From the IMG/VR virus record IMGVR_UViG_3300037805_000644, positions 124,001 to 188,000 of that record: a DNA stretch of 64,000 nt. One strand, given 5' to 3'. The notes beneath the pieces were generated by a model. It did not search any database. It was not told the origin of the DNA and worked only from the letters and a program-made list of their open reading frames with translations. Every line of letters begins with the position of its first letter. Positions within the stretch are counted from its first letter, which is position 1. The position numbers and the translations under genes are program-made. Below are positions 17,173 through 61,671 of this stretch, piece by piece.

Positions 17173-17187
17173 ATAGGGGAGCTATCG
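17173..17187 (-). promoter_or_regulatory. class II promoter-like motif CGAT-N7-CTAT
   Basis: CGATagctcccCTAT, about 200 nt upstream of the sheath ATG. Confidence 0.65.
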
Positions 17188-17366
17188 ACCCAGCCGTGAA
17201 CCTTCATCCTGAGACTCGCCCTCAACCGGAAAGAAAGTCATCTTTCTAATGCCGGTCAGGCGAAGCCGCACCACGCCCACCTTCTTGAGGATCAGAGGTG
17301 CATCGTCAACCCAGCCGTCCGCCTCGGTCGCCAGGGAGCTGGGCGGGGGCAAGAGAATCGGGTCGC

Positions 17367-17702
17367 TCATTCCTCTTGCCCCCTGTCGAATCGAGCCCGG
17401 AGCCGTCGGTACTCTGCGTGGTCCTGAGCTTCCTTCTCCGCCAGGGCCTCAGCAGCCTTACGTCCCCGGAATGCCTTTTTCGCCTCAGCGAGATCGAAGG
17501 GGACCTTGTCGCCCACGGGGTAAACGTAAACCTCATCCACGCTGGACTCATCGTTACCCAGGCGGTCTCCCTCTTCCAGAAAAGCATGTACCTCCTGGTG
17601 CAGAGTCTCAGGAGTGGCCTCCACAAAATCGAAAGCCTGGCCACACCCAATGGTGTAGTCGCACCCACCATTTTGCTCCATAATCACAATGTACTGCATC
17701 AC
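17367..17702 (-). CDS. hypothetical protein
   Basis: Overlaps stop of upstream Zn-ribbon gene; GGCDYTIGCG motif. Confidence 0.7.
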   Translation of the reverse strand: MMQYIVIMEQNGGCDYTIGCGQAFDFVEATPETLHQEVHAFLEEGDRLGNDESSVDEVYVYPVGDKVPFDLAEAKKAFRGRKAAEALAEKEAQDHAEYRRLRARFDRGQEE

Positions 17703-18130
17703 GGATTCTTCTTCCCCAGGCCCTTCTTCATGGCCCGGCTGTTGATGACGTTTGCCCGCACGGCAAACCCCTTCTCGTCTTTGGTGATCGTCCGGTACTG
17801 GCCGTCAGGGTCCCGGGTGATGAGGTTGGGGTCAGCCCCGTCCCGCACCAGCCGCCGCTTCGCTTTCTGACGCTCCTCGATGACCGCCATGCTCTGCTCG
17901 GTGGACTTGCCAATCACCCGGTCGATGTGGGTGTCCAGGCCGTGGATGCCCGTGTTCTGGGGGCCGGGCCCATCCACGTCCTTATTGAAATGCCCACTCA
18001 CGGTGTTAGGCATGGCCCGAGGGGCGGCCTCGTCGCAGCCGGGGCAAGGCATCGGGTCCTTGGACTTGGACGCCTTGTTGGCGGCAGAGAACTGCACGCC
18101 GCATTCGCATTGGTACTTGTAAGTGGGCAA
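17699..18130 (-). CDS. FmdB-family Zn-ribbon protein
   Basis: MPTYKYQCECG..CPGC; TTG start with GGAG RBS. Confidence 0.8.
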   Translation of the reverse strand: MPTYKYQCECGVQFSAANKASKSKDPMPCPGCDEAAPRAMPNTVSGHFNKDVDGPGPQNTGIHGLDTHIDRVIGKSTEQSMAVIEERQKAKRRLVRDGADPNLITRDPDGQYRTITKDEKGFAVRANVINSRAMKKGLGKKNP

Positions 18131-18226
18131 TTGGATCTCCAGGGCGGTTCCTGGCCTATCGTACCCCGCTGGGGTAACAACCTACCCCTTTCAGAGTAAG
18201 GGGTAAGGACTGACCGGAGGGTTCAA

Positions 18227-18472
18227 TTGGAACGGAATAGCAAACTGGGGAAGATGCTCAGGCAAACCACAGAGCTTGCCTGGGAGCGAAGGGCCAAATC
18301 TGCGGAGGAGTGGGCGAAAGCAGCAGAGGTCAGGCTGGTGGCGGCTCATGCTCGGGCGGAAACCTTTAAGGGTGAACTCGGCACTACCCGGCGCTTGAGC
18401 CTGACACTGGTGCTCCTGGTGATCCCCCTCAGTGCCGAAATGCTCCTGCGGGGGCTAGGCTGGGTGGGCTAA
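18227..18472 (+). CDS. small coiled-coil protein with C-terminal TM
   Basis: Preceded by a class II motif (18145-18159), a class I variant (18173-18199) and GGAGG. Confidence 0.55.
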   Translation: MERNSKLGKMLRQTTELAWERRAKSAEEWAKAAEVRLVAAHARAETFKGELGTTRRLSLTLVLLVIPLSAEMLLRGLGWVG

Positions 18473-18475
18473 CCC

Positions 18476-19684
18476 TCAACGGATAATGGGGTACCCTCGC
18501 CCGACCTGGTAAAAGGGGTCCTGCACAGACTCAAGGCCCAACCCCACCTTGGCTTTGATGTTCCCCTCATGTCCGTCCAGCTCATCATCGGACAAGGAGG
18601 CGATGTAGTTGGCTTGCTCTTGCGTCAGGGGGGTGGCCTGGCGCAGGGAGACGTTCAGTGGCACAAAGGCTGCCCACTCCGTCTCGACGTTCAGAGAGAA
18701 GCTGGAGTTGAAGAAATAATCGTTCCCCGTCTCATCATAGATCTCCTCAGACTCCCCCCCAATGCTGATGTTCATGACCTCCAGGCCCTCCGAGGAGAGC
18801 CGCCCGCGAGCCGAGCCAAACAGGTACATCACCGAGTTGTCGGCGATCTCCCGCTGGTCGTAAACGTCTCGGGCAAACACCTCGAACTCCATGGCCATCT
18901 CCCACCGACCCCCGTACTCCATGGCAGAGGCCATGCGGGTGGCCTCCACGACCACGGCAAGCTGGTCCTTATCCTGCACCCTCCGACCAAACGCCAACAC
19001 CACGCCGGGGATGGCGGTGTTGTTGGCGTGACGCTCTCGGATGGGGTAAGGGCCACTGCTCTCGGCCACATAACGGTAATCGGCCTGGATCCAGCGGCCA
19101 TTGCTCAAGGGGGTGTTGAAATTGACGACACCGGTGGGTGCCCCGGAACCAGGGTCGGTCTCCAAGGTGTAATTGGTACCTGCCACCAGCTTGTACCGGG
19201 CGGGCATCTCGTACAGCCTGAGAGACCCGCTCAGTGGTGGGGTCTGTAGCATCCCGGTGGTGGCGTCCGTCATCATCACCTGCTCTTGGTAAGCATTGAG
19301 GAGGGGGTCCACATAGAAGACGTTCTTGTTGTTCTCTTCCCGTACATCTAGGTAATAGACGCCAGGGGGGCTGGGGAAAGTGCCCCCGTTCGCCTGGATG
19401 GCCCTGCCGTCCTCACGGACCCACTCCACGGAATACCCAGGCTTGTTGTTGGCCTTGGCCAGGTGGCAGTGGCTGTAAATGATGCCCTTGTAGTTGTCCG
19501 CTGAGAGAGGGGAGTGCGTCCCCCCAGTGGACTTAACGACGATGCCCCTCTGGGGGCGCTCCCGGAAGCTGTACTTGCCCTGGATGTTCTCGGGCAGGTC
19601 TTCAAACTTGGGGTGTGTCGTCCAGTACGTGCGGAGTTCCTGGGTGAAACGCCGGGTCAGGTAATCGGTGAGGTGGAAAAACAC
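18476..19684 (-). CDS. virion structural protein, tail-terminator/tail-completion-like
   Basis: Position near sheath; YGGRWEMAMEFEVFARDVYDQREIAD; class II motif upstream. Confidence 0.5.
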   Translation of the reverse strand: MFFHLTDYLTRRFTQELRTYWTTHPKFEDLPENIQGKYSFRERPQRGIVVKSTGGTHSPLSADNYKGIIYSHCHLAKANNKPGYSVEWVREDGRAIQANGGTFPSPPGVYYLDVREENNKNVFYVDPLLNAYQEQVMMTDATTGMLQTPPLSGSLRLYEMPARYKLVAGTNYTLETDPGSGAPTGVVNFNTPLSNGRWIQADYRYVAESSGPYPIRERHANNTAIPGVVLAFGRRVQDKDQLAVVVEATRMASAMEYGGRWEMAMEFEVFARDVYDQREIADNSVMYLFGSARGRLSSEGLEVMNISIGGESEEIYDETGNDYFFNSSFSLNVETEWAAFVPLNVSLRQATPLTQEQANYIASLSDDELDGHEGNIKAKVGLGLESVQDPFYQVGRGYPIIR

Positions 19685-19717
19685 GGGTAGCCTCCAAAGT
19701 CCTACAGAGAGGACTGG

Positions 19718-19732
19718 ATAGGCTACCCACCG
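19718..19732 (-). promoter_or_regulatory. class II promoter-like motif
   Basis: CGGTgggtagcCTAT. Confidence 0.7.
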
Positions 19733-22809: not shown

Positions 22810-22846
22810 GGTAACTCCTGAGGAGTTGGTAGTAGGCAAGGTGAAC
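22810..22846 (+). promoter_or_regulatory. class I promoter-like motif
   Basis: GGTAACtcctgaggagttGGTAGTAGGCAAGGTGAAC. Confidence 0.8.
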
Positions 22847-22859: not shown

Positions 22860-23294
22860 ATGAACGTGAACATCGCAAGTGTCAAGGCCCTCTACACCAA
22901 CCCTGAGTTTCTGGTCCTCCTTGCTGTGCTGGAGCTGGCTCAGGAGGAATCCGCCCGACTCCGAGCCCTGGTTGACGCCTACTCCCAGCCCATTCTGGAC
23001 AAGGCGGGGCTGGTGGACGATGAGGGAAACCCCATCACCGACCTGCGCCGGGCTTGGCTCTGCCAGGACGGCGATGCCTGCGACGCCTACTATGCTGCCC
23101 GCCTCCAGGCCAACAACGACAACGGGTTCGACCTGGGGGATAGCTGCCCGGCTCTCGTCGCTGAGAGCAGTGTCACTGACGCTGAGAATGCCTTGATTGC
23201 TGCTGCCAACACCCACTATGGGCTGCCCACCATCTACAACCTGGACCTGCGGGCAAAGTACCTGGACTTGCTCACCAACCCACCCCGCCACTAA
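22860..23294 (+). CDS. hypothetical protein
   Basis: Single plus-strand gene behind a class I motif within the structural region. Confidence 0.75.
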   Translation: MNVNIASVKALYTNPEFLVLLAVLELAQEESARLRALVDAYSQPILDKAGLVDDEGNPITDLRRAWLCQDGDACDAYYAARLQANNDNGFDLGDSCPALVAESSVTDAENALIAAANTHYGLPTIYNLDLRAKYLDLLTNPPRH

Positions 23295-24292
23295 CCCCAC
23301 TCCTCTCGCAGGGGATGCCAAAGCCGCAGCATCCGCTCACCGGCGGCAATACGGGTGGCGGACCTTCCCAGATGAGCCAGGGCCCACCCCGAATGGATCT
23401 CTGATTCCGAGTACCGCACCACTGAATACCCCAAGGTATAAAACCCTTGTGCTGTCTGCACGTCATCCGCAATCCGGGCACGGGCATCCCCGAAAATGTA
23501 GCCAGGGCCATGGAAAGCTTCCCCATCACACAGAACAACCAGCTTTTGCTTGCCGAGAATAACTTTGATGTCTGCTTCCCGAGGTCTCCACACCCCCTCG
23601 AAATCAAGGCTAATCCAATCGTTCAAGACATGGGAATACCCCTGAGCGGCCAGAGTTTCCCCAAAGCCCCTCTCCAATGCGGATCCGCCACCAAATCTAC
23701 GTTTGATTTCTGCGGCTTTCTGCTCTGGGGTCATGGCGTTCCATGCCTGGTGTGCTTTTTGGATGTTAGCTGTGCAGGCCACCTTTTTCCGCAGGGCTGC
23801 CAATTCTCGGTAGCCCCCGACACCAAAATGATCTTCTGCGATGGCCTTGAAAGTTTTGTAAGGGATCCCGAGCCTCCGGGTAAGCCCGCCCACCGTCTCC
23901 CCCGCCCTGTAACCAGAGGCCACTTCACGGTAAAGGGGGTCCCCTTTCTGCCAGTTGCAGATGTCTTCGGGTTGGGGTCGGGAGATGACCTCGGGCAGGG
24001 TCGGGTGCTGCACCTGGGTTTTCTCATACCTGCGCTTGCCCAGCCGATTGCGGAGTTCCTGGCAGGAAGGGCACCTTTTACGGTGAACCTTTTTGGGGTC
24101 CTGAACCTCCCAAACCCCGCCACACTTACGACATTCGGGGTACCCCCGATACTGGGCACGACCCTGCCGCCACCGCTCTCGGAGGGCCAGGTGCTCGGGA
24201 TCGGGGTTGAACCGGAAATGCTGAGACAACGCTCGGTTGTTCCTTACGGACTTACCGCACACCTCACAGGAACCAAGAAACGACCCCATCAC
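23291..24292 (-). CDS. Zn-finger/HTH protein with Vsr/DUF559-like endonuclease; probable homing endonuclease
   Basis: CEVCG..ALSQHF, CRKC/CPSC; ADIKV..LVVLCDGEAFHG..D..LGYSVVRYSESEI. Confidence 0.7.
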   Translation of the reverse strand: MMGSFLGSCEVCGKSVRNNRALSQHFRFNPDPEHLALRERWRQGRAQYRGYPECRKCGGVWEVQDPKKVHRKRCPSCQELRNRLGKRRYEKTQVQHPTLPEVISRPQPEDICNWQKGDPLYREVASGYRAGETVGGLTRRLGIPYKTFKAIAEDHFGVGGYRELAALRKKVACTANIQKAHQAWNAMTPEQKAAEIKRRFGGGSALERGFGETLAAQGYSHVLNDWISLDFEGVWRPREADIKVILGKQKLVVLCDGEAFHGPGYIFGDARARIADDVQTAQGFYTLGYSVVRYSESEIHSGWALAHLGRSATRIAAGERMLRLWHPLREEWG

Positions 24293-25781
24293 AAACCTCC
24301 ACTACCAGCCGGTACACCAAGTACAGGCTGATAGGGGAAATACCGTAGCTGGTGTTCTCCCAAACCTTGGTGCGCCCGCGCTTCTCATTGTGGTCTGGGA
24401 CGGAGCCCTTCTCAGTCTGGAGCGGGGTGACCACCTCGGGCCCTTCGGGGTAGGTGGGCCCTGCCCAGCCTTCATCCTGATCGTAAGACCGCTCACCGGT
24501 CACCGGCATCCGGGGGTACATCGGAGCAGGCTCACCCGACTTCGGGCGGGTCTCGGGCCAGGGGAGTTCCGTGGTCCCGTCGATGGGCATCCGGTACCGG
24601 ATGTCGCCCTCAGCGAGATATCCGATGTTGAAATGCTGCTGGAGCAGGTTACCCCGGTGCGTGGGCCTCCGCACTGGACCCACGCTGTACCGCTCATTGG
24701 TCTGCTTGACGATGAAATCCCGCTGGGTGAGGAGAGGAGAGGGACCCGTCCACACCTCGTACTGGTGTTCCTTGTGCCGCCCCAGGGAGGTCTGGGAGAT
24801 GCGGCGCTCCGCGTCGTCAGGGGCGATGATGGTCTCAAAGGGGCCGTCGTACCCACCAACGAATCCTGTCCCATAGCAGGTCAGGCAGTTGTTCTCAGGC
24901 TGCTTGCTGTACTCCAGCGCACGCACATCCTCACGGGTGCATTCGCAGGGTGATCCACAATGCTTGCGGATAAACAGCTTCACCCGTTCACCACCACACC
25001 CGAGGATCCACTGGTTGCGGCGCACCGCCTCTTCCCAGATGTAATCCATGCTCTCAACCTCGGCGGTTGAGAGTGGTTTGGTTTGGTTGAGGGGGGTCTC
25101 AGTGTAGCCGGAAGGGGTCTCGGAGTCGATGACCACAGTGGTCAGCCGATACCAGTTCCACTTGTCTAGGCCCGAGGCCACGTAGTTGGCGGGGGCCCAG
25201 TATTCGACACGAACAACGGAATCCGCTGTCGGGATGACAGCGTGCTCTACGCTCTCGGTCCCCACCTCAAACCGTGCCTGGTTGATGAGGGTCACCTCAC
25301 CCGCAGGGCCAAACACCTCCGAAACGGGGACCTCTACATCATCAATGTAGACGGTCAGGTCAGCAGGGTGGTTGGCGAATGTCGGTTTGTCATAGGGGGC
25401 CGCATCACGCTGCTTGCAGATTCGGCGGGTGGTTCGGAACTGGAACCTGCGATCATTGGGCTTGTCGCCCTTGAAATTCCAGGCGACATCCCACCGCACT
25501 GTCTCTGAGACGAACTGGAGGTCCGTCCGGTCCCGGTAAAACCCGGACCCGATGGGGAACTCGTTGATGCGGTAAAAGGGCCCCCGGTCGGAGCTGTCCG
25601 ACCGATAGACGTTCACACCTACAACGTGATAGGGGGTGTTGCCGGATAGGAGGGTGGGGTTATCCCACCGGAGATCGATCACCCCTGGCAGGTACGGGCT
25701 TACCGCCGCCCCGTCACTGGGAGGGAGGGGGTAGCCCCCCCCACCAAACCCAGAACTCTTAGGATCCCATCCAGCGGCCAT
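24264..25781 (-). CDS. putative neck/head-closure protein with FN3-like N-terminus and Cys cluster
   Basis: IDLRWDNP..GVNVYRS; GGERVKLFIRKHCGSPCEC..CLTCYGTGFVGGY. Confidence 0.5.
   Translation of the reverse strand: MAAGWDPKSSGFGGGGYPLPPSDGAAVSPYLPGVIDLRWDNPTLLSGNTPYHVVGVNVYRSDSSDRGPFYRINEFPIGSGFYRDRTDLQFVSETVRWDVAWNFKGDKPNDRRFQFRTTRRICKQRDAAPYDKPTFANHPADLTVYIDDVEVPVSEVFGPAGEVTLINQARFEVGTESVEHAVIPTADSVVRVEYWAPANYVASGLDKWNWYRLTTVVIDSETPSGYTETPLNQTKPLSTAEVESMDYIWEEAVRRNQWILGCGGERVKLFIRKHCGSPCECTREDVRALEYSKQPENNCLTCYGTGFVGGYDGPFETIIAPDDAERRISQTSLGRHKEHQYEVWTGPSPLLTQRDFIVKQTNERYSVGPVRRPTHRGNLLQQHFNIGYLAEGDIRYRMPIDGTTELPWPETRPKSGEPAPMYPRMPVTGERSYDQDEGWAGPTYPEGPEVVTPLQTEKGSVPDHNEKRGRTKVWENTSYGISPISLYLVYRLVVEVCDGVVSWFL
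24331..24345 (-). promoter_or_regulatory. class II promoter-like motif for the endonuclease gene, inside the 3' end of the upstream ORF
   Basis: CGGTatttcccCTAT. Confidence 0.65.
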
Positions 25782-26409: not shown

Positions 26410-26485
26410 AGGGAACTCCTGGCGGGGGGTCTTCTCACTTGGGGTGCGGGTATAGGCAGAAGACCGCAACCCCAAAGGAGCAAGG

Positions 26486-31562: not shown

Positions 31563-31595
31563 TCCCCTACAGCATACGATAGCAGGGCTACCGGA

Positions 31596-33301: not shown

Positions 33302-33348
33302 GGGATCCTCCTGTTGGGGATCAACCATAGAGGGGATACCGGCAGCCC

Positions 33349-39643: not shown

Positions 39644-39722
39644 TGGGGTCTCTCCTCTAGGGTCTACCCGAGGAAAGATATAGGCCGAATACCGGGGGGA
39701 GTTTCGATTGCCACCACCCTCC

Positions 39723-41101: not shown

Positions 41102-41175
41102 TGTTCTCTCCATCTGCTCCAGCCCTTGAGGGCGGTCTACTACAGGCGAGCCTATAGCCAGTCCACCATACCAAC

Positions 41176-44395: not shown

Positions 44396-44460
44396 GTCTT
44401 CGGTCTCCTATCTTCGGCAAGTCTGTACTCGCCTATCTGGGCCAGGCTATAGGCTCTCTA

Positions 44461-45300
44461 TCAGACCCCGCCTGAGGCACCCTGGTCCAAGTTGGCGATG
44501 ATAACGAACGTGGGGTTGCTCCCCGGGGTTACACTGGACAGGTAAATCTCTTTCACGGACCCGAAAGTCGTGATCTCAAAGTCACCACCACCGAGGGCCC
44601 CCAGGGCCAGGTAAGGCTGGTTCCAGCCGAAACTCACGGCGAGGCCGTTGGCGGCGTCCTTGTTACGCACCGTCACCGAGGTGGTTGGCCAGGGGAGGAC
44701 AACACCTGTGGGAGGACCGTTACCGGCGCCCCCGTTGTCAAGAGTCTGATCGAAACCCGAGGGGGCGTCCCCTTCGGAGACGCCGAGATCGGTGACTCCC
44801 CCGGTGATGACCACGGTGCCTTCACGGAGGCTCAATACCTCCGGGGGCGGGAGGGCCAGGATCGGACCGGTGATGTCAAACCCTGCGTTTGCCCCTGCAA
44901 GGGCCTGGGCGGGGCCCGCAGCGCGGATCTGCTGAACAGCCAAGTACACCTGGGCGTTGTTCGACAGATTCAGGGCAGGGAAATCCTGCAAGGTGAAGAT
45001 GGCCCTGGTGGCCTTGCCCAGCTTTTCATCACAGGCACCCCACCCGTTGCGGCGGATGGTCGGGCTGCGGAACATGCGACCCGCCAGTACGGTGAACAGG
45101 TTCTGCCGCACGGCGGGGGCTACAACCCCCGACCCGATGGGAGCACCATACAGGCTATCCACGCTGGACGACGCCCACACCCGGTACCCGGAGGCGTCCG
45201 GGGAGTGTGGGATCTGGATGGAGATGCGGTCAGATGTCCGCAAGACGATGCCCGGGAACTGACCCCAAGGGCCCATATCAAAGTTGTGTGGCACGCTCAT
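44461..45300 (-). CDS. putative virion protein
   Basis: Beta-rich, Gly/Ala-rich; structural context. Confidence 0.55.
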   Translation of the reverse strand: MSVPHNFDMGPWGQFPGIVLRTSDRISIQIPHSPDASGYRVWASSSVDSLYGAPIGSGVVAPAVRQNLFTVLAGRMFRSPTIRRNGWGACDEKLGKATRAIFTLQDFPALNLSNNAQVYLAVQQIRAAGPAQALAGANAGFDITGPILALPPPEVLSLREGTVVITGGVTDLGVSEGDAPSGFDQTLDNGGAGNGPPTGVVLPWPTTSVTVRNKDAANGLAVSFGWNQPYLALGALGGGDFEITTFGSVKEIYLSSVTPGSNPTFVIIANLDQGASGGV

Positions 45301-48306: not shown

Positions 48307-48368
48307 AACGGTCTCCGATGCAGACACAGAAGTCCTCACCCAGAGTCGCTGATAGGCGGGCAACCGAA

Positions 48369-52196: not shown

Positions 52197-52372
52197 AGGT
52201 TTTTTACTCCTTGTCCTGTCGAGAGAACTACCCTTTATGAGGTAGATCGTTACCCCCTATCTCCACCAGCCCGGTACTGCGGCTATCCTCAACGGGTAAA
52301 GAGTCGGTGGCGACCTGCCTCTCGGTGGTTTCTGGGCTCGCTGTTTTACCTCGACGACTCAAAGGAGTTGCC

Positions 52373-53872: not shown

Positions 53873-54138
53873 TCGGCATCGTGGTAAGCCTCCTCCCGGG
53901 TGAGCACATTGAAGCACCGGGGGGCAGTCCCGTCGGCCAACATCGCCTCCCGCACCTTCTGAGGGACGTAGCTGTTCATGAGCTGCATGTCGGCCCGAGA
54001 AAGCAACACACCCCCTTCGATGTCGATGACCTCAGGCACCGTGCCCTTGAGGCGCATCTCCTGCCGGGCCTCTTCCGAGAGGAGGCCCAGCAGGAGGTTG
54101 ATGTCGTTGGTGCTCATGTAAACGGTAGCGGTGCTCAC
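53869..54138 (-). CDS. hypothetical protein
   Basis: Downstream of class I motif at 54167-54201. Confidence 0.65.
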   Translation of the reverse strand: MSTATVYMSTNDINLLLGLLSEEARQEMRLKGTVPEVIDIEGGVLLSRADMQLMNSYVPQKVREAMLADGTAPRCFNVLTREEAYHDAD

Positions 54139-54166
54139 AGTGTCCCCTTTGTCCCTGTTTTCTCTC

Positions 54167-54201
54167 TCACCTCACCTACTACCGAGGCGCCGAGAGTTAC
54201 C
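54167..54201 (-). promoter_or_regulatory. class I promoter-like motif
   Basis: GGTAACtctcggcgcctcGGTAGTAGGTGAGGTGA. Confidence 0.8.
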
Positions 54202-54212
54202 TTTTTCCGGGG

Positions 54213-55403: not shown

Positions 55404-55435
55404 GTTTCACCTCACCAGGTGAGGGGTATAAACAA

Positions 55436-55468
55436 AAAACCCTGGCAGGTTGCCCTGCCAGGGGTTTT
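55436..55468. terminator. intrinsic terminator after the major capsid gene
   Basis: aaaaccctggcagg-ttgc-cctgccaggggtttt. Confidence 0.85.
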
Positions 55469-55512
55469 AATGGGTGTGCTCATCAGAGCCGCTGTCTAGC
55501 CTCTAAGGGCTA

Positions 55513-56385
55513 TTAGCGGGTGACGGTGAGGCGGGCCAACCCACGGGGGTTGTAGGCGCCGATACCCAGGTTCTCGAAGACCGAGAAACCGATGGTACGT
55601 GCCTTGGGGTCGTCGGCGCTGAGCACGGTCAGCTCGGTGCGGACCGGGATCCGACCGAAGTGCTCGGGCTCGCAGCACAGGTAGACCGTGCCGACGGGAA
55701 CCAGGCGGCTCACGACGATCTGGGCACCGTAGATGACGCCCATGAGACCAGTCTTGAGCAGGGTGCCCTGGGACTCGATGTCCAAGATGTCACGACCGAA
55801 CTTACGGATGTCCGCGTAGTCACGGGCGTTCATGTAGACACGAGCAACGCGGAGGTCCCAACGCTCGATGAGAGCGAAGGCATCAGCCAGGACCGCACCC
55901 GAGATGGGGGCGATGACCGGGATGTCCGGGTTGAGCTGACCAGGCAGCGAGTCGAAGCCCGCAGTGGCGATGGAGTCGAGCACGGCAAAGACGCGCTCAT
56001 CCTCGGCAGCCTGCACCTGGGCACGGGCCAGGTCCTGAGCACGCTCAATCAGATCGAAGCGGCGCTCCTTGATCTGGGTGAGCGGGATCTCCGGGTTCGA
56101 GGCAATCTCGAACAGGGGGAAGATCACACGACGAGGCTTGGTGATGGCCAGGATGTTCTGACCTTCCTCACCAATCACGAATGCGGTCACATCCGGGTCT
56201 TTGTCGTAGATCGGCAGGGCCCCGTCAGGAAGCTGCTCGACCAGGAAGGTCTTGCGGCCGACTGCGGCGTAGTCACGCCGGGTACGGAGGGGCTGCGTCA
56301 TACTGGCAGCGAGCTTGGCCCGTCCCTGGGGGGACTGGATCAGCTCGCCGATGAGGCGTTGCTTGACGGCGTTTGTAACGGCCAT
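55513..56385 (-). CDS. major capsid protein (HK97 fold)
   Basis: KLAASMTQPLRTRRDY..FLVEQLPDGALPIYD, PLFEIASNP, GFSVFENLGIG; gene order protease-scaffold-decoration-MCP; strong RBS. Confidence 0.88.
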   Translation of the reverse strand: MAVTNAVKQRLIGELIQSPQGRAKLAASMTQPLRTRRDYAAVGRKTFLVEQLPDGALPIYDKDPDVTAFVIGEEGQNILAITKPRRVIFPLFEIASNPEIPLTQIKERRFDLIERAQDLARAQVQAAEDERVFAVLDSIATAGFDSLPGQLNPDIPVIAPISGAVLADAFALIERWDLRVARVYMNARDYADIRKFGRDILDIESQGTLLKTGLMGVIYGAQIVVSRLVPVGTVYLCCEPEHFGRIPVRTELTVLSADDPKARTIGFSVFENLGIGAYNPRGLARLTVTR

Positions 56386-56413
56386 GATTTTATCTCCTTG
56401 AACCCGTCAGGGA

Positions 56414-57121
56414 TCAGACGCGCTGGTCGTAGACCAGCTCGTTCTGGGTTGCGTCAGGTGCCATCTTGAGCACCGCGAGGGTGGTCACGGCGGCGGCACC
56501 GAGGCCACCTGCGTGGACGAAGCCTTCGGCACTCTCGGCGGCAACGGCATCCAACGCCTGGAGGGCGGCGGCGCCATCGACGATGCGACGGGGCTGGAGG
56601 TAACCATTGCGGCTGGCCATGAGGCGCATACCGGCGATGTACGTCAGGGCAGCACCCTGGGCATCCGCACCGATGGCGTTCTGGAGCTGCGTCTCAAACA
56701 GGCCGTTGGCATGGGTGCCCTGGCTGCTGAGGTAGGTGTTCTTACCGCTGGCGGTACCAGGGGTGTTCTCGAAGGCATTGCCGTTCACCGAGTTGATGAA
56801 CACACCCAGAGCGCGGTAGCCGATCTCCTGGGCGTTGGCTGCCGCGATGGCGGTCTGCGTGGCCGCATCACCCGGGCCGCCGATCATGTTCTCGCCAGCA
56901 TCGGGGCGCACAAAGGCGACCGAGCCAGAGAGGACACCGACGAGGGTGCTGTCGACCTGCTGAGAGGTGGTGGTCCCAGCGACGGGATCCACAACGGGGT
57001 TGGCCTGGATGAACGAGTCGGCTGTCATGACGCCGGTTGCGTTCCGTACACCAATGTGCAACGGGCGCAGCGCCGAAGACGACTCGGTCCAACCACCACT
57101 GGCCTGTCCGAGAAGGGGCAT
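56414..57121 (-). CDS. putative head decoration/minor capsid protein
   Basis: Immediately upstream of MCP; class II motif at 57242-57256. Confidence 0.6.
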   Translation of the reverse strand: MPLLGQASGGWTESSSALRPLHIGVRNATGVMTADSFIQANPVVDPVAGTTTSQQVDSTLVGVLSGSVAFVRPDAGENMIGGPGDAATQTAIAAANAQEIGYRALGVFINSVNGNAFENTPGTASGKNTYLSSQGTHANGLFETQLQNAIGADAQGAALTYIAGMRLMASRNGYLQPRRIVDGAAALQALDAVAAESAEGFVHAGGLGAAAVTTLAVLKMAPDATQNELVYDQRV

Positions 57122-57269
57122 AGTGTCCTCCATTCTCCTGTTTACAGGAGGGTGAGTCTCAAAGGGCTACCCCCCAACAAGGAGGACAGCGGCAAGCTGG
57201 AAGGGCTCCCAGACCGGGGCCTTCACTGAATAGGGGGAGGGATAGACGCTCTATTGAGAACCCCCCCCT

Positions 57270-57307
57270 AAAAAAGTAAAGCCCACCCGATTTCTCGGAT
57301 GGGCTTT
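57270..57307 (-). terminator. intrinsic terminator after scaffold gene
   Basis: aaagcccacccga-tttc-tcggatgggcttt with T-tract on minus strand. Confidence 0.75.
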
Positions 57308-57343
57308 AGAGGCCGAAACGGGGTTAGAACCCCCGGCTGGGGG

Positions 57344-58828
57344 TCAGACGCCGAACACCTTGCTCACGTCGGGGGCGGACTTCCAGAGCTTTTCCAGCAT
57401 ATCCACCGAACCCGGGGCCGCCGAGGCGACGCGAGTCTGGTTCCCAAGGGCGGTGACGCCGTTGCTGGCCTGGCGGGGCTGAGGGGACAGCTCCAGCTCT
57501 TCACCGGCCGTGTGGCCAGGGAGACCGGCGGAGAAAATCTCCTCCAGCAGCTCTTCGTCGGCAGCGGAGAGGGACATGCTGCTGCCCCCACTCAGGCCCA
57601 TGGGGTCATGGCCAGCCGTGTCGAACAGGTTGGCAGCCTTGTCGGCACCATCCTCGTCGTCGTCCTCGTCGCCGTCGTCAGTGGCCTTCTTGCCAGCTTC
57701 GACCGCGTCGTCGTCCTCATCCTCGTCGTCGCCTGCCTTCTTCTTCTTGAGGAAGTCGGGGAACTTGTCGTCCTTCTTGTCGTCCTTCTTGTCGTCCTTC
57801 TTGTCGTCCTTCTTGTCGCCCTTGTCCCACTGCTTCTTGAAAGCTTCGGGGACCTCACCGGCCAGGACCATCTCGCCACAGGCGCTCATCATCCCGACTT
57901 CATCGTCCATGAAGTCGTCAGCCATGCCCATCATCTCATCCGAGGGGTCGAACATGGCGGTGATCAGCTCACCCGAGGTGACCACACCGTCAGAGTCGGT
58001 GTCCACGGCGGCGAAGAGCGCCTTCGATCCGGTCCAATCGTCGGCCAGGGCAAACCCGTCCTCACCACCACCATGGGTGGCGAAGTAGCTGGCAACTCGC
58101 CCCTGGAGGCTGGCGAAACGGGCCGAACCCTTCTTCTCGCCCTTGGCGGTGGAAGACGCCTCAGCACGCTCCTGCTCCTTCGGATCGTTCTGGCTGGCGG
58201 TGATCTGAGCCTTGAGGCCACGGATCTCGGAGGCCATGTGCTGCATCATGGACATCATGTCGTCGCCGGGGGCGCCAACATCGAGATCGTCATCCATGCC
58301 GAACATGTCGTCATCCATGCCGAACATCTCGTCGCCCATGTCGTCCATGTCGTCGCCGAGGAACATGTCATCATCCATGGCCAGGAAGCCGCCACCGACG
58401 CGCTTGAGGCTGGCCGCAAGGTACGAGTTGGGCAGATCCATCATGTCGAGGGCCTGCGACTCAACCAGATCCTGCGTCGCATTCTTGCCGAGCTGATGCT
58501 TGGCGAGAACGAGGCACTTGGCGGCCTTGCGCTGGATCCCAGCAGACAGCTTGGCATCCTTCTGAACCCGGGGGTTCCGCTTGTGCGCCGGGTGGTCACC
58601 ATCCTCGGTGTCGTAGCCGGGAACTGCCGGGGGGTTACCCTCGGGGTACGGGCCCTGGTGGACATCCTCGGCCCAAGCCGAGGTGTCGCCCTTTTGGTAC
58701 TTCTCGTAGGCAGGATCGGCCTGGTGGGCCGGGTGGCCCTGGTCTTCCTTGCCGTAACCGGGAACTGCGGGTGCGGCAGACGCCTTACGGTCCGTCTTGC
58801 TCCACGTCGTGCGAGTGCGATTGCTCAT
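57344..58828 (-). CDS. putative capsid scaffolding protein, acidic low-complexity, with EF-hand motif
   Basis: Between protease and capsid genes; GAGGAG RBS before ATG 58828; DTDSDGVVTSGE loop. Confidence 0.7.
   Translation of the reverse strand: MSNRTRTTWSKTDRKASAAPAVPGYGKEDQGHPAHQADPAYEKYQKGDTSAWAEDVHQGPYPEGNPPAVPGYDTEDGDHPAHKRNPRVQKDAKLSAGIQRKAAKCLVLAKHQLGKNATQDLVESQALDMMDLPNSYLAASLKRVGGGFLAMDDDMFLGDDMDDMGDEMFGMDDDMFGMDDDLDVGAPGDDMMSMMQHMASEIRGLKAQITASQNDPKEQERAEASSTAKGEKKGSARFASLQGRVASYFATHGGGEDGFALADDWTGSKALFAAVDTDSDGVVTSGELITAMFDPSDEMMGMADDFMDDEVGMMSACGEMVLAGEVPEAFKKQWDKGDKKDDKKDDKKDDKKDDKFPDFLKKKKAGDDEDEDDDAVEAGKKATDDGDEDDDEDGADKAANLFDTAGHDPMGLSGGSSMSLSAADEELLEEIFSAGLPGHTAGEELELSPQPRQASNGVTALGNQTRVASAAPGSVDMLEKLWKSAPDVSKVFGV
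57767..57822 (-). repeat. 12-bp coding tandem repeat (KKDD)n
   Basis: gtcgtccttctt repeated about 4 times. Confidence 0.8.
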
Positions 58829-58859
58829 CGTGGTTCTCCTCTGGCGCTCTGCCAGGTCT

Positions 58860-60317
58860 TTACTGTTGTCCCCGAAGGGCCTGGCCCCTTCGGGACATGA
58901 TAGAGCCGAGCCGCAGGAACTTCCTGGCCTCAACTGGATTGGGCTGACGCCCAAAGGCGGAGGCGCAAGCCCCCAGAAAATCTCTGCCGGTACTGTACCG
59001 ACTGGTCGGGCCTGCACTCAGTGCTGCCCGGTATAGGTCTCGATCAACACTAATGCCGGCTGCCTTATCCAGAGCCGCCACGCCCTCAACGAGGGCGATA
59101 TCGGTGCTGGCAATGCGAGTGAGGACACCTACGGCGGCCTCACGCTGGATGGTGTCATTCGGGGCGGTCGAGTCGCCAACGGACTTGGACAGGTCTCGGC
59201 CCCGCATCTCATCTTTGATGCGCTTTTTCACACGCTGCTGCATGTGCTCGGTCAACTCATCCTCGGTCTCATCGAGCGGGGATTTCTTCTCCGCAGGGGG
59301 GGCTTCACCACCCTCCTCAGCAGCGGGGGCATCCCCTTCTTCATCATCCCAGCCGGCGAGGAAAGCATCACCGCCCAGGGAGGCGCCTGTGTGCGTCGCA
59401 CGAGCAGCACGCTGCATCTGGTCCGCATTCCACTCCGGCGGTGGGGTGTTCAGCACCTTGGCAGCCTTGTCGAGCATGGCCTGAGTCGGCTCCAACACAT
59501 TCCGCAGGACTGCTCCCGTGAACGCGGGAGTCTCTACCCAGCTCGCCTCGATGAACCGGACACCGCCCGTGGGGTCGATGCTCTCATGGCCACACAGCTC
59601 TGCAATCCGATGCTGGCGACCCAGCTCATCGAAAAATGCGGTGCCTTTGGCGTACTTGATGTGAGAACACATCTCGGTTTCGTCAGCGGCCCAGTGCCCG
59701 CAACGGGTGCAGACCGTGCCGTCCACGGTGCAACCCATGGACATCGTGGCCATCTTGCCGGACGTGATGGCCTTAACCAACTCGGTGTGCTTGCGGTCCG
59801 TGGCCACCAGAATGTCGATGTAGATCGAATCCCCGATGTCCCGAGCCACTGCATCAATGATGCGGCCCTTGGACTGCTCCTCAATCTGTACGTGCTCGAC
59901 GAAATTGTGCCCACCCACAAACGTCTCAAATGCCTTGAGCAGGACGGGCCGGCTCCAGGCATCGAGGTTGTTGTTGATGAATTTGTCGCAGCTCTGGCGG
60001 ATACGGTACTCGGCGTAACGGCGGTTGACCCGGAAGCCCCCCTCCATGACATGACCGAGCCTCACCCCTTGCGGAGACTCCACATCCACCGAGGCCACGA
60101 TAGTGGCATGGGTGAGCAGGAAGTTCTCAGGGTTGAAGGGCTTGCCCAAGATTTGGGTAGCCCGCTCCACCAGGTTGGAGGACATCGCCACCTTGGTCGG
60201 GCGAAAGGATGAGGCAACCTTCCCGTGCTGCTTAGCGGCGGCTCGGACATTGCCCCATTGCTCTTTCCTGATGGAAGGGGTGGCAACACTGGCGTATGCA
60301 TACTTCATCAAAGGCAT
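58860..60317 (-). CDS. prohead (capsid maturation) protease with Zn-binding insert
   Basis: NNNLDAW, NFVEH, KGRIIDA, MSMGC..CTRCG..CSH, FIEASWVETPA. Confidence 0.8.
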   Translation of the reverse strand: MPLMKYAYASVATPSIRKEQWGNVRAAAKQHGKVASSFRPTKVAMSSNLVERATQILGKPFNPENFLLTHATIVASVDVESPQGVRLGHVMEGGFRVNRRYAEYRIRQSCDKFINNNLDAWSRPVLLKAFETFVGGHNFVEHVQIEEQSKGRIIDAVARDIGDSIYIDILVATDRKHTELVKAITSGKMATMSMGCTVDGTVCTRCGHWAADETEMCSHIKYAKGTAFFDELGRQHRIAELCGHESIDPTGGVRFIEASWVETPAFTGAVLRNVLEPTQAMLDKAAKVLNTPPPEWNADQMQRAARATHTGASLGGDAFLAGWDDEEGDAPAAEEGGEAPPAEKKSPLDETEDELTEHMQQRVKKRIKDEMRGRDLSKSVGDSTAPNDTIQREAAVGVLTRIASTDIALVEGVAALDKAAGISVDRDLYRAALSAGPTSRYSTGRDFLGACASAFGRQPNPVEARKFLRLGSIMSRRGQALRGQQ

Positions 60318-60319
60318 GA

Positions 60320-60940
60320 TTACATCCCCCCCATCATGCGCTGGCGGGCCAGCCGGATGCCGGAGAACGGCTGAGGGGCAGGCCCCGCAGCATCCGCATC
60401 GAAGTAATCAGGGTGACCCATGATATCGCACTTCTTCACCAGGAACATGCACTCAGGGCACCCGAGTAGCTTCTCCCGGGCTCCATCACGCATCTTGTAA
60501 GCAGCAGGGCGGAGACACCCCATCTTGCATTTGGGGCAGGTGTAACTGCCCGTATCAAGCTCTGCTTTTGTAGCCCTGTAATTGCGGTTCTTGGCCGCCC
60601 AATACAGAGACTTTTTGACAAAAGCCTGGGCAACTCGAAGAGAGCTGGCTGCCTTCGGCCCACCGGGGACAGACACGGTTCCGGCCCCACCGGGGACGTT
60701 GTCGTGCTCTGCCTTTGGCGGGATAAGATCTTTGGGTTCGTAACGCCCCAGCTCTTCAACTGGGTAACGCTCACTCCCGTGAGGCCACTCAACATCGACC
60801 ATGCCGATAGCAGGGTAAACCGCCACGACACGACCGCTGTTTTCGTAGTTGCCGCTCATGAAAGGATACACCAGGTCACCGACCCCAAACTCTGAGGCCC
60901 GCTGCTGAAAATCCACGTATGCCGAGCGGTCTTTACTCAC
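60320..60940 (-). CDS. head-module protein with SH3-like and Zn-ribbon parts
   Basis: FGVGDLV..GRVVAV..VDVEW; CPKC..CPEC. Confidence 0.6.
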   Translation of the reverse strand: MSKDRSAYVDFQQRASEFGVGDLVYPFMSGNYENSGRVVAVYPAIGMVDVEWPHGSERYPVEELGRYEPKDLIPPKAEHDNVPGGAGTVSVPGGPKAASSLRVAQAFVKKSLYWAAKNRNYRATKAELDTGSYTCPKCKMGCLRPAAYKMRDGAREKLLGCPECMFLVKKCDIMGHPDYFDADAAGPAPQPFSGIRLARQRMMGGM

Positions 60941-60954
60941 GTCAGTTCTCCGAA

Positions 60955-61533
60955 TCAGGCGTACAGGTTGAAGCCGTGGGCCTTCTTGCCGGACTCTTTC
61001 TCGTCGCCCTCATCCTCATCCTCATCATCCTCAGCAGACTTGACGATCTGGGAGGCAAGGCGTAGAGCTTTGGCAACCCGGGCCTCCTCGGCGAAGCTGA
61101 GGTTGGTGCTCTGGAGAGCAGCCACGAGGCTCAGGAAGCTGGCTTGGACGCCGGCCCGTGCGGGCTGCTCCGCCATGCTCGGAGCAGCAAGGTTGCCACC
61201 CTCCACTTCCTCGCGAAGCTCCCGGTTCTCCTGCTGGGAGAACTGGCCGCCCATGTAACCGGACTCGTCGCCGTCACCCTCAAGAGGACCGCCATCCTCC
61301 CGGCCGATCTCCGAGGGATCGAAGTCAGCGTTCTTGACCTCACCCCCCTCGTCACGCTCAAGGCCAGCGGTGACCTCAATGCGGTCCGAGAGGAGGTCGC
61401 AGCGGTGGGCGAAGTCAGCAGCGATTTTCTCGGGGATCCCGAGTGCTGCGTGCTCTGCCTGAATGAGGGTGGCAACGCGATCCAAAGCGGTAGAAGCCTG
61501 GAAAGCGCCCTTCTTGGTGATACGGTTGGGCAT
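60955..61533 (-). CDS. acidic head-module protein
   Basis: AGGAG RBS; class II motif at 61615-61629. Confidence 0.65.
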   Translation of the reverse strand: MPNRITKKGAFQASTALDRVATLIQAEHAALGIPEKIAADFAHRCDLLSDRIEVTAGLERDEGGEVKNADFDPSEIGREDGGPLEGDGDESGYMGGQFSQQENRELREEVEGGNLAAPSMAEQPARAGVQASFLSLVAALQSTNLSFAEEARVAKALRLASQIVKSAEDDEDEDEGDEKESGKKAHGFNLYA

Positions 61534-61671
61534 GTCTTCGTTCTCCTGTTCCGTCAGGGCCTCAGCGGGATGACAGCTCGGGCGTTGAATGCCCTTCGCT
61601 GATATGGGCTGGGTATAGACGAACGATTGAAAATCGGTGGTTGTAACCCGGTTTACCAGGTCGGTTAAAGT

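What the first reader, a model, noticed from the sequence alone, without database searches (positions are those of the whole stretch)
17173..61629. Compact late-type promoter motif YRRT-N7-CTAT (mostly CGGT-N7-CTAT), 15 copies
Seen with a fixed 7-nt spacer, oriented toward the next gene start. Minus strand: 17173-17187, 19718-19732, 24331-24345, 26452-26466, 31579-31593, 33327-33341, 39680-39694, 41154-41168, 44449-44463, 48352-48366, 55428-55442 (GGGT..TTAT variant), 57242-57256, 61615-61629. Plus strand: 18145-18159, 52272-52286. It precedes the sheath, capsid, head-module and paralog-trio genes. It does not match sigma70, sigma54 or T4 late (TATAAATA) consensus. Inference: recognised by a phage-encoded sigma factor or RNA polymerase not in this window; it would also class PhoH, GNAT, ART and the phosphoesterase as late genes.
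Basis: partly seen in the sequence, partly recalled or inferred. Interest (0 to 1): 0.75.

Follow-up and report, generated by a model that had tools for sequence, protein, structure and literature searches.

The report
Huge-phage late-gene promoter motif
A short two-part DNA signal (CGGT, seven bases, CTAT, then a GGTAG-like box about 12 bases on) sits just upstream of the structural genes of an uncultured ~400-kb marine phage and its relatives; it is most likely their late-gene promoter, read by the host RNA polymerase with phage-made sigma-like helpers rather than by a phage polymerase.

Summary
YRRT-N7-CTAT occurs 14 times in the window against 3.5 expected, and CGGT-N7-CTAT 9 times against 0.6. 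Only the 7-base spacer is enriched. 13 of 14 window copies lie 15-130 nt upstream of a gene start on the sense strand.

The window is part of a 223-kb IMG/VR contig, about half of a ~400-kb marine huge phage. Ten of the 15 listed copies are conserved at orthologous intergenic positions in a collinear relative (G001). A copy also sits at one fixed orthologous position in all 14 related phages examined.

The motif is longer than reported. A third element, YRGTRRRG (GGTAGA, GTAGGA, GGTGAG), lies about 12-13 nt after CTAT. The same box is the downstream element of a second, ECF-sigma-like promoter class (GGTAAC-N15-RGTAGG) that precedes non-structural genes.

The finding's class precedes the major-head operon and the sheath, baseplate and tail-fibre genes, so "late" is reasonable.

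No phage RNA polymerase was found in complete relatives. A conserved phage protein with two tandem sigma region-4 domains is the best candidate reader; this is inferred, not shown.

The transcription start is untested because no RNA run was listed. One listed copy (55428) is a terminator T-tract, and two others (18145, 26452) are unconserved.

The parts
17153..17187 (-). Class-B unit: CGATAGCTCCCCTAT + downstream ..TATCAGAGGAGG box. Lies 200 nt upstream of the 1767-aa sheath-domain gene (11670-16973).
   Evidence: Sheath domain phrog_2839, E 6.6e-27. Conserved at G001 301698, including the TATCAG box.
18145..18178 (+). CGGTTCCTGGCCTAT. Faces only an 81-aa TTG ORF (18227-18472). Doubtful copy.
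   Evidence: No counterpart in G001.
19700..19732 (-). Class-B unit: CGGTGGGTAGCCTAT-N12-GTAGGA. Lies 33 nt upstream of the 402-aa gene 18476-19684.
   Evidence: All 15 nt identical in G001 (304263). The same spacer, with TTAT, occurs in G002 before a different gene, the 1703-aa orthologue.
24313..24345 (-). CGGTATTTCCCCTAT inside the 3' end of 24264-25781, 41 nt upstream of 23291-24289.
   Evidence: The downstream gene has no G001 orthologue.
26434..26466 (-). CGGTCTTCTGCCTAT-N12-AGTGAG. Lies 42 nt upstream of a ~90-aa ORF (26137-26409).
   Evidence: Not conserved at the orthologous G001 position.
31565..31593 (-). CGGTAGCCCTGCTAT-N8-GTAGGG. Lies 34 nt upstream of PhoH (30591-31544).
   Evidence: phrog_170, E 1e-76. 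Conserved at G001 316988.
33306..33341 (-). CGGTATCCCCTCTAT. Lies 25 nt upstream of 31970-33301; here the box coincides with the Shine-Dalgarno AGGAGG.
   Evidence: The gene has no G001 orthologue.
39663..39694 (-). CGGTATTCGGCCTAT-N11-GGTAGA. Lies 36 nt upstream of 39320-39643.
   Evidence: G001 322853 has CAATAATTGGCCTAT at the orthologous site.
41136..41168 (-). TGGTGGACTGGCTAT-N12-AGTAGA. Follows a terminator-like hairpin with a T-run, 52 nt upstream of 40847-41101.
   Evidence: Conserved at G001 324887.
44432..44463 (-). TGATAGAGAGCCTAT-N11-GATAGG. Lies 53 nt upstream of the 424-aa 'MPY' gene (43121-44395) and its two paralogues.
   Evidence: Identical in G001 328892. The same architecture stands before the orthologue in IMG/VR relatives L024, L025, L026, L031 and L032.
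48335..48366 (-). CGGTTGCCCGCCTAT-N11-GGTGAG. Lies upstream of 47356-48306.
   Evidence: Conserved at G001 332965.
52272..52300 (+). CGGTACTGCGGCTAT-N8-GGTAAA. Lies 86 nt upstream of the SbcD-like exonuclease (52373-53872).
   Evidence: phrog_704, E 9e-44. G001 336585 has TGATACTCCGGCTAT.
55406..55463 (-). Intrinsic terminator (stem 55440-55463 plus T-tract). Probably not a motif copy, although a GGTGAGGTGA box and an ATG follow.
   Evidence: 10-bp stem, 8 GC pairs, tail TTTTTTGTTT..
57222..57256 (-). CAATAGAGCGTCTAT-N14-AGTGAA. Lies just after terminator 57277-57308. Upstream of 56414-57121, which is followed by the major head gene 55513-56385.
   Evidence: Major head protein phrog_2522, E 1.4e-50. 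Conserved at G001 340734.
61595..61629 (-). CAATCGTTCGTCTAT-N10-TATCAGCGAAGG. Lies 81 nt upstream of 60955-61533.
   Evidence: Conserved at G001 345325, including the TATCAG box.

Best explanation
The motif is the upstream half of a late-gene promoter class of a clade of uncultured huge phages. The full element is tripartite: c-CGGT(AG)-N-(GC)CTAT-(A/C), about 11 nt, then YRGTRRRG (GGTAGA, GTAGGA, GGTGAG).

Shown:
- It is strongly enriched, spacing-specific and orientation-specific.
- It lies 24-65 nt before most of the starts it faces.
- It precedes structural genes.
- It is conserved at orthologous positions in relatives.

Inferred:
- The GGTAG-like box is a -10-type element, because the same box ends a second, ECF-sigma-like promoter class (GGTAAC-N15-RGTAGG) that precedes non-structural genes.
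- With that ruler CTAT sits at about -30 to -27 and CGGT at about -41 to -38. The bipartite element therefore replaces the -35 hexamer, and transcription would start about 23-26 nt after CTAT.
- The host RNA polymerase does the work, since no phage polymerase is detectable in complete relatives.
- The two 4-bp elements lie one helical turn apart and form a pseudo-palindrome, GGTAG-N5-CTATC. They are proposed to be read by a conserved phage protein made of two tandem sigma region-4 helix-turn-helix domains (contig 208354-208965, outside the window). It would act as a -35-region surrogate or activator, in the manner of the T4 MotA box or of a two-HTH monomer such as MarA.
For: Enrichment.

Full architecture RRT-N7-YTAT-N10-13-RGTRRR: 11 observed against 0.8 expected in the contig and 16 against 1.4 in G001. 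The N6 and N8 controls stay at background.

Box position: RGTRRR starts at +12 or +13 after CTAT in 22 of 55 sites and at +9..+16 in 28 of 55. The genome frequency is 0.0044 per position.

Orthologous conservation with G001, which is collinear at about 50-95% aa identity: in 15 site pairs the unselected spacer columns 5-11 are 75% identical, against 46% in the upstream flank. The CTAT-to-box distance is kept even where the sequence between them has diverged, for example at the contig 208333 / G001 364529 pair.

Deeper relatives:
- 7 of about 13 orthologous upstream regions in G002 keep the element.
- It stands before the MPY orthologue in 5 IMG/VR contigs.
- Between the tandem-sigma4 gene and the next gene, all 14 phages examined have a 4-mer, N7, YTAT and a GTAG-type box at +11..+13.

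Gene classes: the finding's class precedes the major head, sheath, baseplate, tail-fibre, PhoH and exonuclease genes. Class A precedes the tRNA nucleotidyltransferase gene and the helicase cluster.

No phage polymerase: PF00940, PF00562 and PF04552 are absent from the contig and from G001-G003 and LR745208.1. The T7 positive control was positive and tblastn with T7 RNAP found nothing.

Candidate reader:
- Sigma70_r4 37.5 bits in two stretches (cut-off 24.1) and r4_2 34 bits.
- AF2 model pLDDT 82.7 with two sigma4-like domains. Foldseek matches only the -35-binding domains of SigE, SigD, SigR and SigF.
- More than 720 homologues on contigs up to 536 kb.
- The gene sits next to a NusG/KOW-like gene and a clamp-loader gene.
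- Weak co-variation: a CGTT first half occurs in 4 phages that carry K or T at YRL[x]RA of HTH1. CGGT, TGGT, CGAT or AGAT occurs in 9 phages with Q, A or M, with one K exception.
Against: - No transcript data: no RNA run was listed, so neither promoter activity nor the start site is measured.
- In some sites the Shine-Dalgarno sequence overlaps or directly follows the box (33327, 19718, contig 91113). A start 6-7 nt after the box would remove or clip it.
- The box offset varies between sites (+8 to +16), more than sigma-type spacers usually tolerate.
- Only about half the sites have a clean RGTRRR box.
- Protein-DNA binding could not be modelled; the tool does not fold such complexes.
- The co-variation rests on about two independent lineages.
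- The sigma2-bearing partner is unknown. The ECF-like sigma of G001 and G002 scores below the Pfam cut-offs. It is absent from the half-genome contig. G002 has it but lacks the GGTAAC class.
- Neither G002 nor LR745208.1 shows genome-wide enrichment of the motif.
Confidence: 0.55

Rival explanations
1. Compact promoter for a phage-encoded, non-canonical RNA polymerase, single-subunit or otherwise unrecognisable. The start would lie a few nt after CTAT, as in T7, SP6 and K11 promoters, which end ..CACTATA|G.
For: CTAT(A) resembles the -5..-1 core of T7-group promoters (T7 phi1.1A and phi1.1B read). At each orthologous site the whole 17-bp block, spacer included, is conserved, as for a contiguous polymerase footprint. 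In short-leader sites the Shine-Dalgarno sequence lies 13-20 nt after CTAT and would stay in the mRNA. Many giant ORFs have no recognisable family. A 1731-aa protein carries a DVDGD string conserved in G001.
Against: No PF00940 or PF00562 hit in the contig, in G001, or in the CheckV-complete G002 and G003, and the T7 control was positive. tblastn with T7 RNAP found nothing. The 1731-aa protein has no match to solved structures, and D-x-D-x-D strings are common by chance. This reading does not explain the fixed-distance GGTAG box shared with the ECF-like class. No start codon lies closer than 24 nt, apart from one doubtful case at 19 nt.
Confidence: 0.12
2. Operator for a dimeric or pseudo-dimeric phage regulator that binds the GGTAG-N5-CTATC pseudo-palindrome. 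The site would modulate (repress, time or activate) promoters defined by other sequences and would not itself be the promoter.
For: The extended consensus is an imperfect inverted repeat. GRTAG-like pentamers occur three times per unit. A two-HTH protein is encoded by every phage of the clade.
Against: The site is strictly oriented towards the gene. CTAC never replaces CTAT, while GGT, GAT and AAT interchange. No sigma70-like promoter excess accompanies it: 2 found against 3.6 expected over 20 kb. Its distance to the box and to starts is constrained, like a promoter element.
Confidence: 0.15
3. RNA-level element: a 5'-UTR stem-loop or a processing or stability site in which CUAU pairs with the downstream GUAG or AUAG.
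For: CUAU can pair with GUAG or AUAG, and several sites extend the stem (44449: GCCTAT..ATAGGC; 24331: a 9-bp stem). One orthologous hairpin shows a compensatory change (19718 against G001 304263).
Against: Folding of the 44 nt from CTAT onward is only slightly better than shuffles: mean z -0.59, with 11 of 55 below -1.5. No stem has a fixed position. What is conserved is sequence identity, not pairing. The CGGT half lies upstream and has no consistent partner.
Confidence: 0.06
4. Chance or compositional artefact of AT-richer intergenic DNA.
For: CTAT alone is 2.6-fold denser in intergenic DNA. The loose core RRT-N7-CTAT is not enriched genome-wide against shuffles.
Against: The spacer is specific, the orientation is specific, and the sites are conserved at orthologous positions.
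Confidence: 0.01

Closest known systems
Phage T4 middle promoters (MotA box at -30 plus a sigma70 -10; sigma appropriation by AsiA/MotA)
   Same: A phage-specific element occupies the -35 region while the -10-type element is shared with another promoter class. A phage DNA-binding factor would supply the upstream contact to host RNAP.
   Different: The sequence is unrelated. The element here is bipartite (4-N7-4) rather than a 9-bp box. It drives late structural genes, not middle genes. The candidate factor is a tandem sigma4 protein, not a MotA fold. No AsiA was sought or found.
ECF (group 4) sigma promoters (-35 with AAC, 16-17 bp spacer, -10 with CGT/GTA)
   Same: The companion class GGTAAC-N15-RGTAGG has this layout, and the finding's class shares its downstream box. 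The candidate factor's domains are closest to ECF sigma region 4.
   Different: The finding's class has no AAC -35 hexamer. The relatives' ECF-like sigma scores below the Pfam cut-offs and was not found in this contig.
T4 late promoters (TATAAATA; gp55 + gp33 + sliding clamp gp45)
   Same: A phage-specific late promoter read by host RNAP with small phage sigma-fragment proteins. The candidate gene lies beside a clamp-loader gene.
   Different: No TATAAATA. The element extends far upstream of -10. gp55 is region-2-like, whereas this protein is region-4-like and duplicated.
MarA/SoxS/Rob marbox (RE1-N7-RE2, read by one monomer with two HTH motifs)
   Same: Two 4-bp recognition elements separated by 7 bp, asymmetric and orientation-dependent, overlapping the -35 region. 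(Comparison from my own knowledge of that family.)
   Different: AraC-type HTHs, not sigma4. An accessory activator of sigma70 promoters, not a phage late switch.
Sigma54 promoters (TGGC-N7-TTGC, -24/-12)
   Same: The same 4-N7-4 geometry, with GG at positions 2-3.
   Different: GC at -12 is absent. GG is often GA or AA. No Sigma54 DNA-binding domain is present in any of the five phage records.
T7-group promoters (..CACTATA|G)
   Same: A CTAT(A) core and a contiguous block of about 17 bp conserved at each site.
   Different: No T7-like RNAP gene in complete relatives. The upstream half is unrelated. An extra downstream box is present.

Membership tests
Sigma70 (group 1) promoter | TTGACA-like -35 and TATAAT-like -10, 16-18 bp apart | tested here: not met
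   Consensus scan of window 38001-58000: 2 sites against 3.6 expected, none at a motif copy. The motif columns show no such hexamers.
Sigma54 promoter | GG at -24 and GC at -12 (TGGCACG-N4-TTGC), plus a sigma54 protein | tested here: not met
   Geometry is the same (4-N7-4), but the second element is CTAT (T, A, T invariant). G3 is A in 15 of 55 sites. PF04552 is absent from the contig, G001-G003 and LR745208.1.
T4-type late promoter | TATAAATA at -10 with no upstream element | tested here: not met
   No TATAAATA in the aligned sites. Conserved elements extend 15 nt upstream of CTAT.
T7-like single-subunit RNAP promoter | A T7-family RNAP gene (PF00940) in the genome | tested here: not met
   No hit in the contig, G001, G002, G003 or LR745208.1. 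The same search finds T7 gene 1 at E 1e-109. tblastn found nothing. The contig itself is only about 42% complete.
T7-like single-subunit RNAP promoter | Transcription start immediately after the conserved block | not testable with these tools
   No RNA run was listed for this sequence.
phiKZ/AR9-type multisubunit phage RNAP promoter | Phage beta/beta'-like subunits | tested here: not met
   PF00562 is absent from all five records while all 14 control genomes rang. No NADFDGD-type string in long ORFs.
ECF-sigma-type promoter | -35 containing AAC, about 16-17 bp spacer, short GT-containing -10 | tested here: inconclusive
   Met by the companion class GGTAAC-N15-RGTAGG: 24 against 0.3 expected here, 83 against 0.2 in G001. 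The finding's class has only the downstream box and no AAC hexamer.
Activator-dependent / sigma-appropriation promoter (T4 MotA type) | A phage factor binds a specific element centred near -30 to -35 and contacts RNAP | not testable with these tools
   Position is inferred from the shared box. Needs EMSA, footprinting or in-vitro transcription.
Functional promoter (any class) | Primary 5' ends of transcripts downstream of the element | not testable with these tools
   Only DNA runs hold the sequence.

The most novel reading that the evidence does not exclude
A widespread clade of uncultured 400-540-kb phages switches host RNA polymerase to late genes with a new kind of specificity subunit. This is a about 200-aa protein made of two tandem sigma region-4 domains. 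As a pseudo-dimer it would read the pseudo-palindromic CGGTAG-N5-CTATC in place of the -35 hexamer. It would work with a separate sigma2-bearing partner, as a split or two-component sigma, possibly coupled to a NusG-like protein and the replication clamp loader encoded beside it.
Probability: 0.3. Interest if true: 0.8.

Novelty: new variant of a known kind. Interest (0 to 1): 0.6.

Why it matters
Almost nothing is known about how the uncultured huge phages found in metagenomes schedule their genes. Here two sharply defined promoter classes can be read straight from sequence. They separate structural from non-structural genes and can be transferred to relatives, giving a temporal map for genomes in which most genes have no annotation.

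The late class has an unusual three-part layout. It co-occurs with a highly conserved, structurally unprecedented tandem-sigma4 protein found in more than 700 metagenomic sequences. If the link holds, it is a new way of redirecting bacterial RNA polymerase and a compact orthogonal promoter-factor pair. It would also help to recognise transcription units, and possibly hosts, of this clade.

Tried and rejected
- **RNA evidence.** No RNA run was listed. The DNA runs X2-X5 carry essentially identical sequence, so they gave no informative natural variants.
- **Protein-DNA complex prediction.** The job for the tandem-sigma4 protein on a motif duplex was counted but not folded. It is no evidence either way.
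- **Hairpin or RNA-structure reading.** Only weak excess stability was found. The short stem GGTAG/CTATC over the N5 loop fails in most sites (by inspection).
- **Giant virion-module proteins as a hidden polymerase.** 11 ORFs were scanned: no polymerase family matched, and only three weak tail-protein or unknown-function hits appeared. The one tried against solved structures (the 1731-aa DVDGD protein) had no match.
- **LR745208.1 and G002 genome-wide counts.** No enrichment with the regex derived from this contig. Conservation there is visible only at orthologous positions.
- **H-versus-C difference in HTH1 as the determinant of CGGT versus GAAT.** Rejected, because GGT, GAT and AAT interchange within one genome.
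- **Literature.** No description of this motif or of tandem-sigma4 phage factors was found.

Full report
**Context.** The window is bases 124,001-188,000 of a 222,939-bp linear IMG/VR viral contig, 61% G+C, with a CheckV completeness of about 42%. The sequence occurs in seawater metagenomes, and only DNA runs were listed. Nothing close exists among deposited phages; the best match is 47% aa identity to LR745208.1, an unannotated 485-kb 'uncultured phage'. The closest relative I found is G001 (IMGVR_UViG_3300028422_000919; 402 kb, terminal repeats, 60% G+C). It is collinear with the contig: contig 1-222,939 corresponds to G001 174.6-377.1 kb, at about 50-95% aa identity. The window therefore belongs to a ~400-kb huge phage of which only about half is assembled.

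**Check of the observation.** All 14 exact coordinates are reproduced. YRRT-N7-CTAT gives 14 matches against 3.5 expected (maximum 7 in shuffles), and CGGT-N7-CTAT gives 9 against 0.6. Over the contig, CGGT-N7-CTAT is about 36-fold denser in intergenic than in coding DNA. The spacer is specific: intergenic GGT-Nx-CTAT counts are 17 for N7 and 0-2 for N5, N6, N8 and N9. Twenty of 27 copies (13 of 14 in the window) lie on the sense strand 15-130 nt before a called start, a zone that holds 5.5% of strand positions (p about 5e-20). The gene calls are my own crude codon-usage caller.

Three listed copies are weak:
- 55428-55442 is the stem end and T-tract of a strong terminator.
- 18145(+) faces only a doubtful 81-aa ORF and is not conserved.
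- 26452 is not conserved in G001.

**Conservation.** Fifteen contig copies, ten of them in the window, have a copy at the orthologous intergenic position in G001. In these pairs the spacer columns 5-11, which were not used to select the pairs, are 75% identical against 46% in the 24 nt upstream.

The element persists in more distant phages:
- It stands before the orthologue of the 424-aa 'MPY' gene in five IMG/VR contigs.
- Seven of about 13 orthologous upstream regions in G002 (536 kb, 52% G+C) keep it.
- In the gap that follows one particular gene (described below), all 14 phages examined have a 4-mer, N7, YTAT and a GTAG-type box at +11..+13.

Genome-wide counts in G002 and LR745208.1 are not above background. 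The deep conservation is therefore positional rather than a matter of copy number.

**The element is longer than described.** Aligning 55 sites from the contig and G001 gives c-CGGT-A-G-nnn-G-C-CTAT-(A/C). This is an imperfect inverted repeat, GGTAG-N5-CTATC. Downstream lie a C-rich stretch and then a purine-rich box, YRGTRRRG (CGGTAGAG, CAGTAGGA, TGGTGAGG). RGTRRR starts at +12 or +13 after CTAT in 22 of 55 sites and at +9..+16 in 28 of 55, against a genome frequency of 0.0044 per position. The full pattern RRT-N7-YTAT-N10-13-RGTRRR occurs 11 times against 0.8 expected in the contig and 16 against 1.4 in G001, with N6 and N8 controls at background. The CTAT-to-box distance is kept in most orthologous pairs even where the intervening bases have diverged completely.

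**A second promoter class gives a ruler.** Reading all upstream regions revealed a much stronger motif, GGTAAC-N12-cGGTAGTAGGTGAGGTGAa. In G001 it takes the form GGTAAC-N15-RGTAGG-N7-8-gAAC. Counts are 24 against 0.3 expected here and 83 against 0.2 in G001. An 'AAC' -35, a spacer of about 16-17 bp and a short GTA-containing -10 is the layout known for ECF sigma promoters; that comparison rests on my own knowledge of the family. This class precedes small genes, a tRNA nucleotidyltransferase gene and a helicase cluster. It is densest in the non-structural part of G001.

The finding's class shares the RGTAG(R) box but not the GGTAAC. It precedes the following genes:
- the operon ending in the major head protein (55513-56385; phrog_2522, E 1e-50);
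- the sheath-domain giant gene;
- a baseplate-wedge gene and a tail-fibre-like gene elsewhere on the contig;
- PhoH and an SbcD-like exonuclease.

'Late' is thus a reasonable label, inferred from gene function. If the shared box is a -10-type element, CTAT lies at about -30 to -27 and CGGT at about -41 to -38. The bipartite element then replaces the -35 hexamer, and transcription would start about 23-26 nt after CTAT.

The distances from CTAT to the start codon fit that placement. The median is about 42 nt. Apart from one doubtful 19-nt case and one mis-called start, the shortest are 24, 24, 24, 24 and 25 nt. They do not prove it. Against it, in a few sites the Shine-Dalgarno sequence overlaps or abuts the box (33327, 19718), and the box offset ranges from +8 to +16.

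**Who reads it.** I found no T7-type RNAP (PF00940), no beta-subunit domain (PF00562) and no sigma54 DNA-binding domain (PF04552) in any of the following:
- the contig;
- G001;
- the CheckV-complete G002 and G003;
- LR745208.1.

The PF00940 search does find T7 gene 1, and tblastn with T7 RNAP is negative. The giant ORFs match no polymerase family. Host RNAP is therefore the likely enzyme.

G001 and G002 encode a divergent ECF-like sigma (L035, L038; region 2 at 15.9 bits and Sigma70_ECF at 20.8 bits, both below cut-off). It lies in the part of the genome missing from this contig.

The contig itself, outside the window at 208354-208965, encodes a 203-209-aa protein with two tandem sigma region-4 domains: Sigma70_r4 37.5 bits in two stretches and r4_2 34 bits, both above cut-off, plus PHROG sigma families. 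Further facts about this protein:
- **Distribution.** It is present and highly conserved in every relative examined. It has more than 720 homologues at 50-79% identity on contigs up to 536 kb.
- **Structure.** Its AF2 model (pLDDT 82.7) is all-helical. Foldseek matches only single -35-binding domains of SigE, SigD, SigR and SigF, with no full-length analogue.
- **Neighbourhood.** The gene always follows a clamp-loader gene and a ~180-aa gene with weak NusG/KOW hits. It is always followed by a copy of the motif.

Two HTH domains in one chain fit two 4-bp elements one helical turn apart, and a pseudo-dimer fits a pseudo-palindrome. The invariant second helix (SQGLVRHRF) would match the invariant CTAT, and the more variable first helix would match the variable first half. 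In the 14 phages, CGTT first halves go with K or T at YRL[x]RA. CGGT, TGGT, CGAT and AGAT go with Q, A or M, with one exception. This amounts to about two independent lineages and is only a lead. Binding could not be modelled.

**Rivals.**
It lacks a polymerase and does not explain the shared box.
- A pure operator reading is weakened by the strict orientation and the absence of other promoter signals.
- An RNA-structure reading is weak: mean folding z is -0.59 and no stem has a fixed position.
- Chance is excluded.

**Verdict.**
- It is best read as a late-gene promoter class with three parts, used by host RNAP under phage-encoded sigma-like factors.
- Promoter nature has about 0.75 confidence.
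- The -35-region placement has about 0.6 confidence.
- The tandem-sigma4 reader has about 0.3-0.4 confidence.
- All three await 5'-end mapping and binding assays.

Noticed in passing
window 1304-1329(+), 3584-3609(+), 4137-4160(+), 5824-5849(+), 22810-22835(+), 27801-27827(+), 29127-29152(+), 35901-35926(+), 54176-54201(-), 52228-52254(-): A second, stronger promoter-like class: GGTAAC-N12-15-(c)GGTAGTAGGTGAGGTGAa, followed by SD and ATG. It has an ECF-sigma-like layout. Counts are 24 in the contig against 0.3 expected and 83 in G001 against 0.2. It precedes non-structural genes.
   Followed up: partly
outside the window: contig 208354-208965(-) (L039:455-1084): A gene for a ~205-aa protein with two tandem sigma region-4 domains and no region 2. 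It has more than 720 highly conserved homologues on huge-phage contigs and no full-length structural analogue in the PDB. One NCBI copy is filed under a Planctomycetota MAG, which is only a hint of the host.
   Followed up: partly
outside the window: contig 209078-209623(-) and 209639-211048(-); L096-L104: Conserved gene order: clamp loader (DNA_pol3_delta2/AAA), then a ~180-aa protein with weak NusG/KOW hits, then the tandem-sigma4 gene, then a motif copy, then a ~100-aa gene. This may be a transcription module next to replication genes.
   Followed up: no
G001 85018-86199 (L035:1168-2349) and G002 (L038:1150-2073): Relatives encode a divergent ECF-like sigma with a long N-terminal extension (region 2 and region 4 both score below the Pfam cut-offs). 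There is no homologue in this contig, which covers only the half of the genome collinear with G001 174-377 kb.
   Followed up: partly
window 55440-55463, 57277-57308, 50601-50633; hairpin plus T-run just upstream of 41154-41168: Strong intrinsic terminators sit directly upstream of motif copies, in a terminator-then-promoter arrangement. The scanned 20 kb holds 19 terminator-like sites against 13.8 expected.
   Followed up: partly
window 55513-56385(-): Major head protein (phrog_2522, E 1.4e-50), 96% identical to its G001 orthologue. The 276-aa protein at contig 122314-123144 is 94% identical but has no family hit.
   Followed up: partly
contig 108821-114016(-) (L008): A 1731-aa virion-module protein carries YQDVDGDF, conserved in G001. 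The string resembles the DbDGD signature of two-barrel polymerases. There is no sequence match to solved structures, and it is probably chance.
   Followed up: partly
contig 50-123 kb and 185-196 kb, minus strand: A run of giant ORFs (3755, 2346, 2121, 2108, 1731 and 1703 aa, and others). They have almost no PHROG matches. Only a few class-B copies punctuate very long operons.
   Followed up: no
window 10134-11576(-): A 480-aa ORF with a C-terminal HNH / homing-endonuclease domain lies between the plus-strand early-type cluster and the sheath gene. It has no G001 orthologue.
   Followed up: no
G001 88.8-110.4 kb: A family of repeated coding segments (GATGGNCCNGCTATCG.., with MORN-like 'EWW.NG' repeats) produces false motif hits in G001.
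   Followed up: no
window 19700-19732 against G001 304263; window 44432-44463: Some units carry a stem-loop right after CTAT. One has a compensatory change between phages (AGTCCT/AGGACT against GGTCC/GGACC). This is not a general feature of the class.
   Followed up: partly
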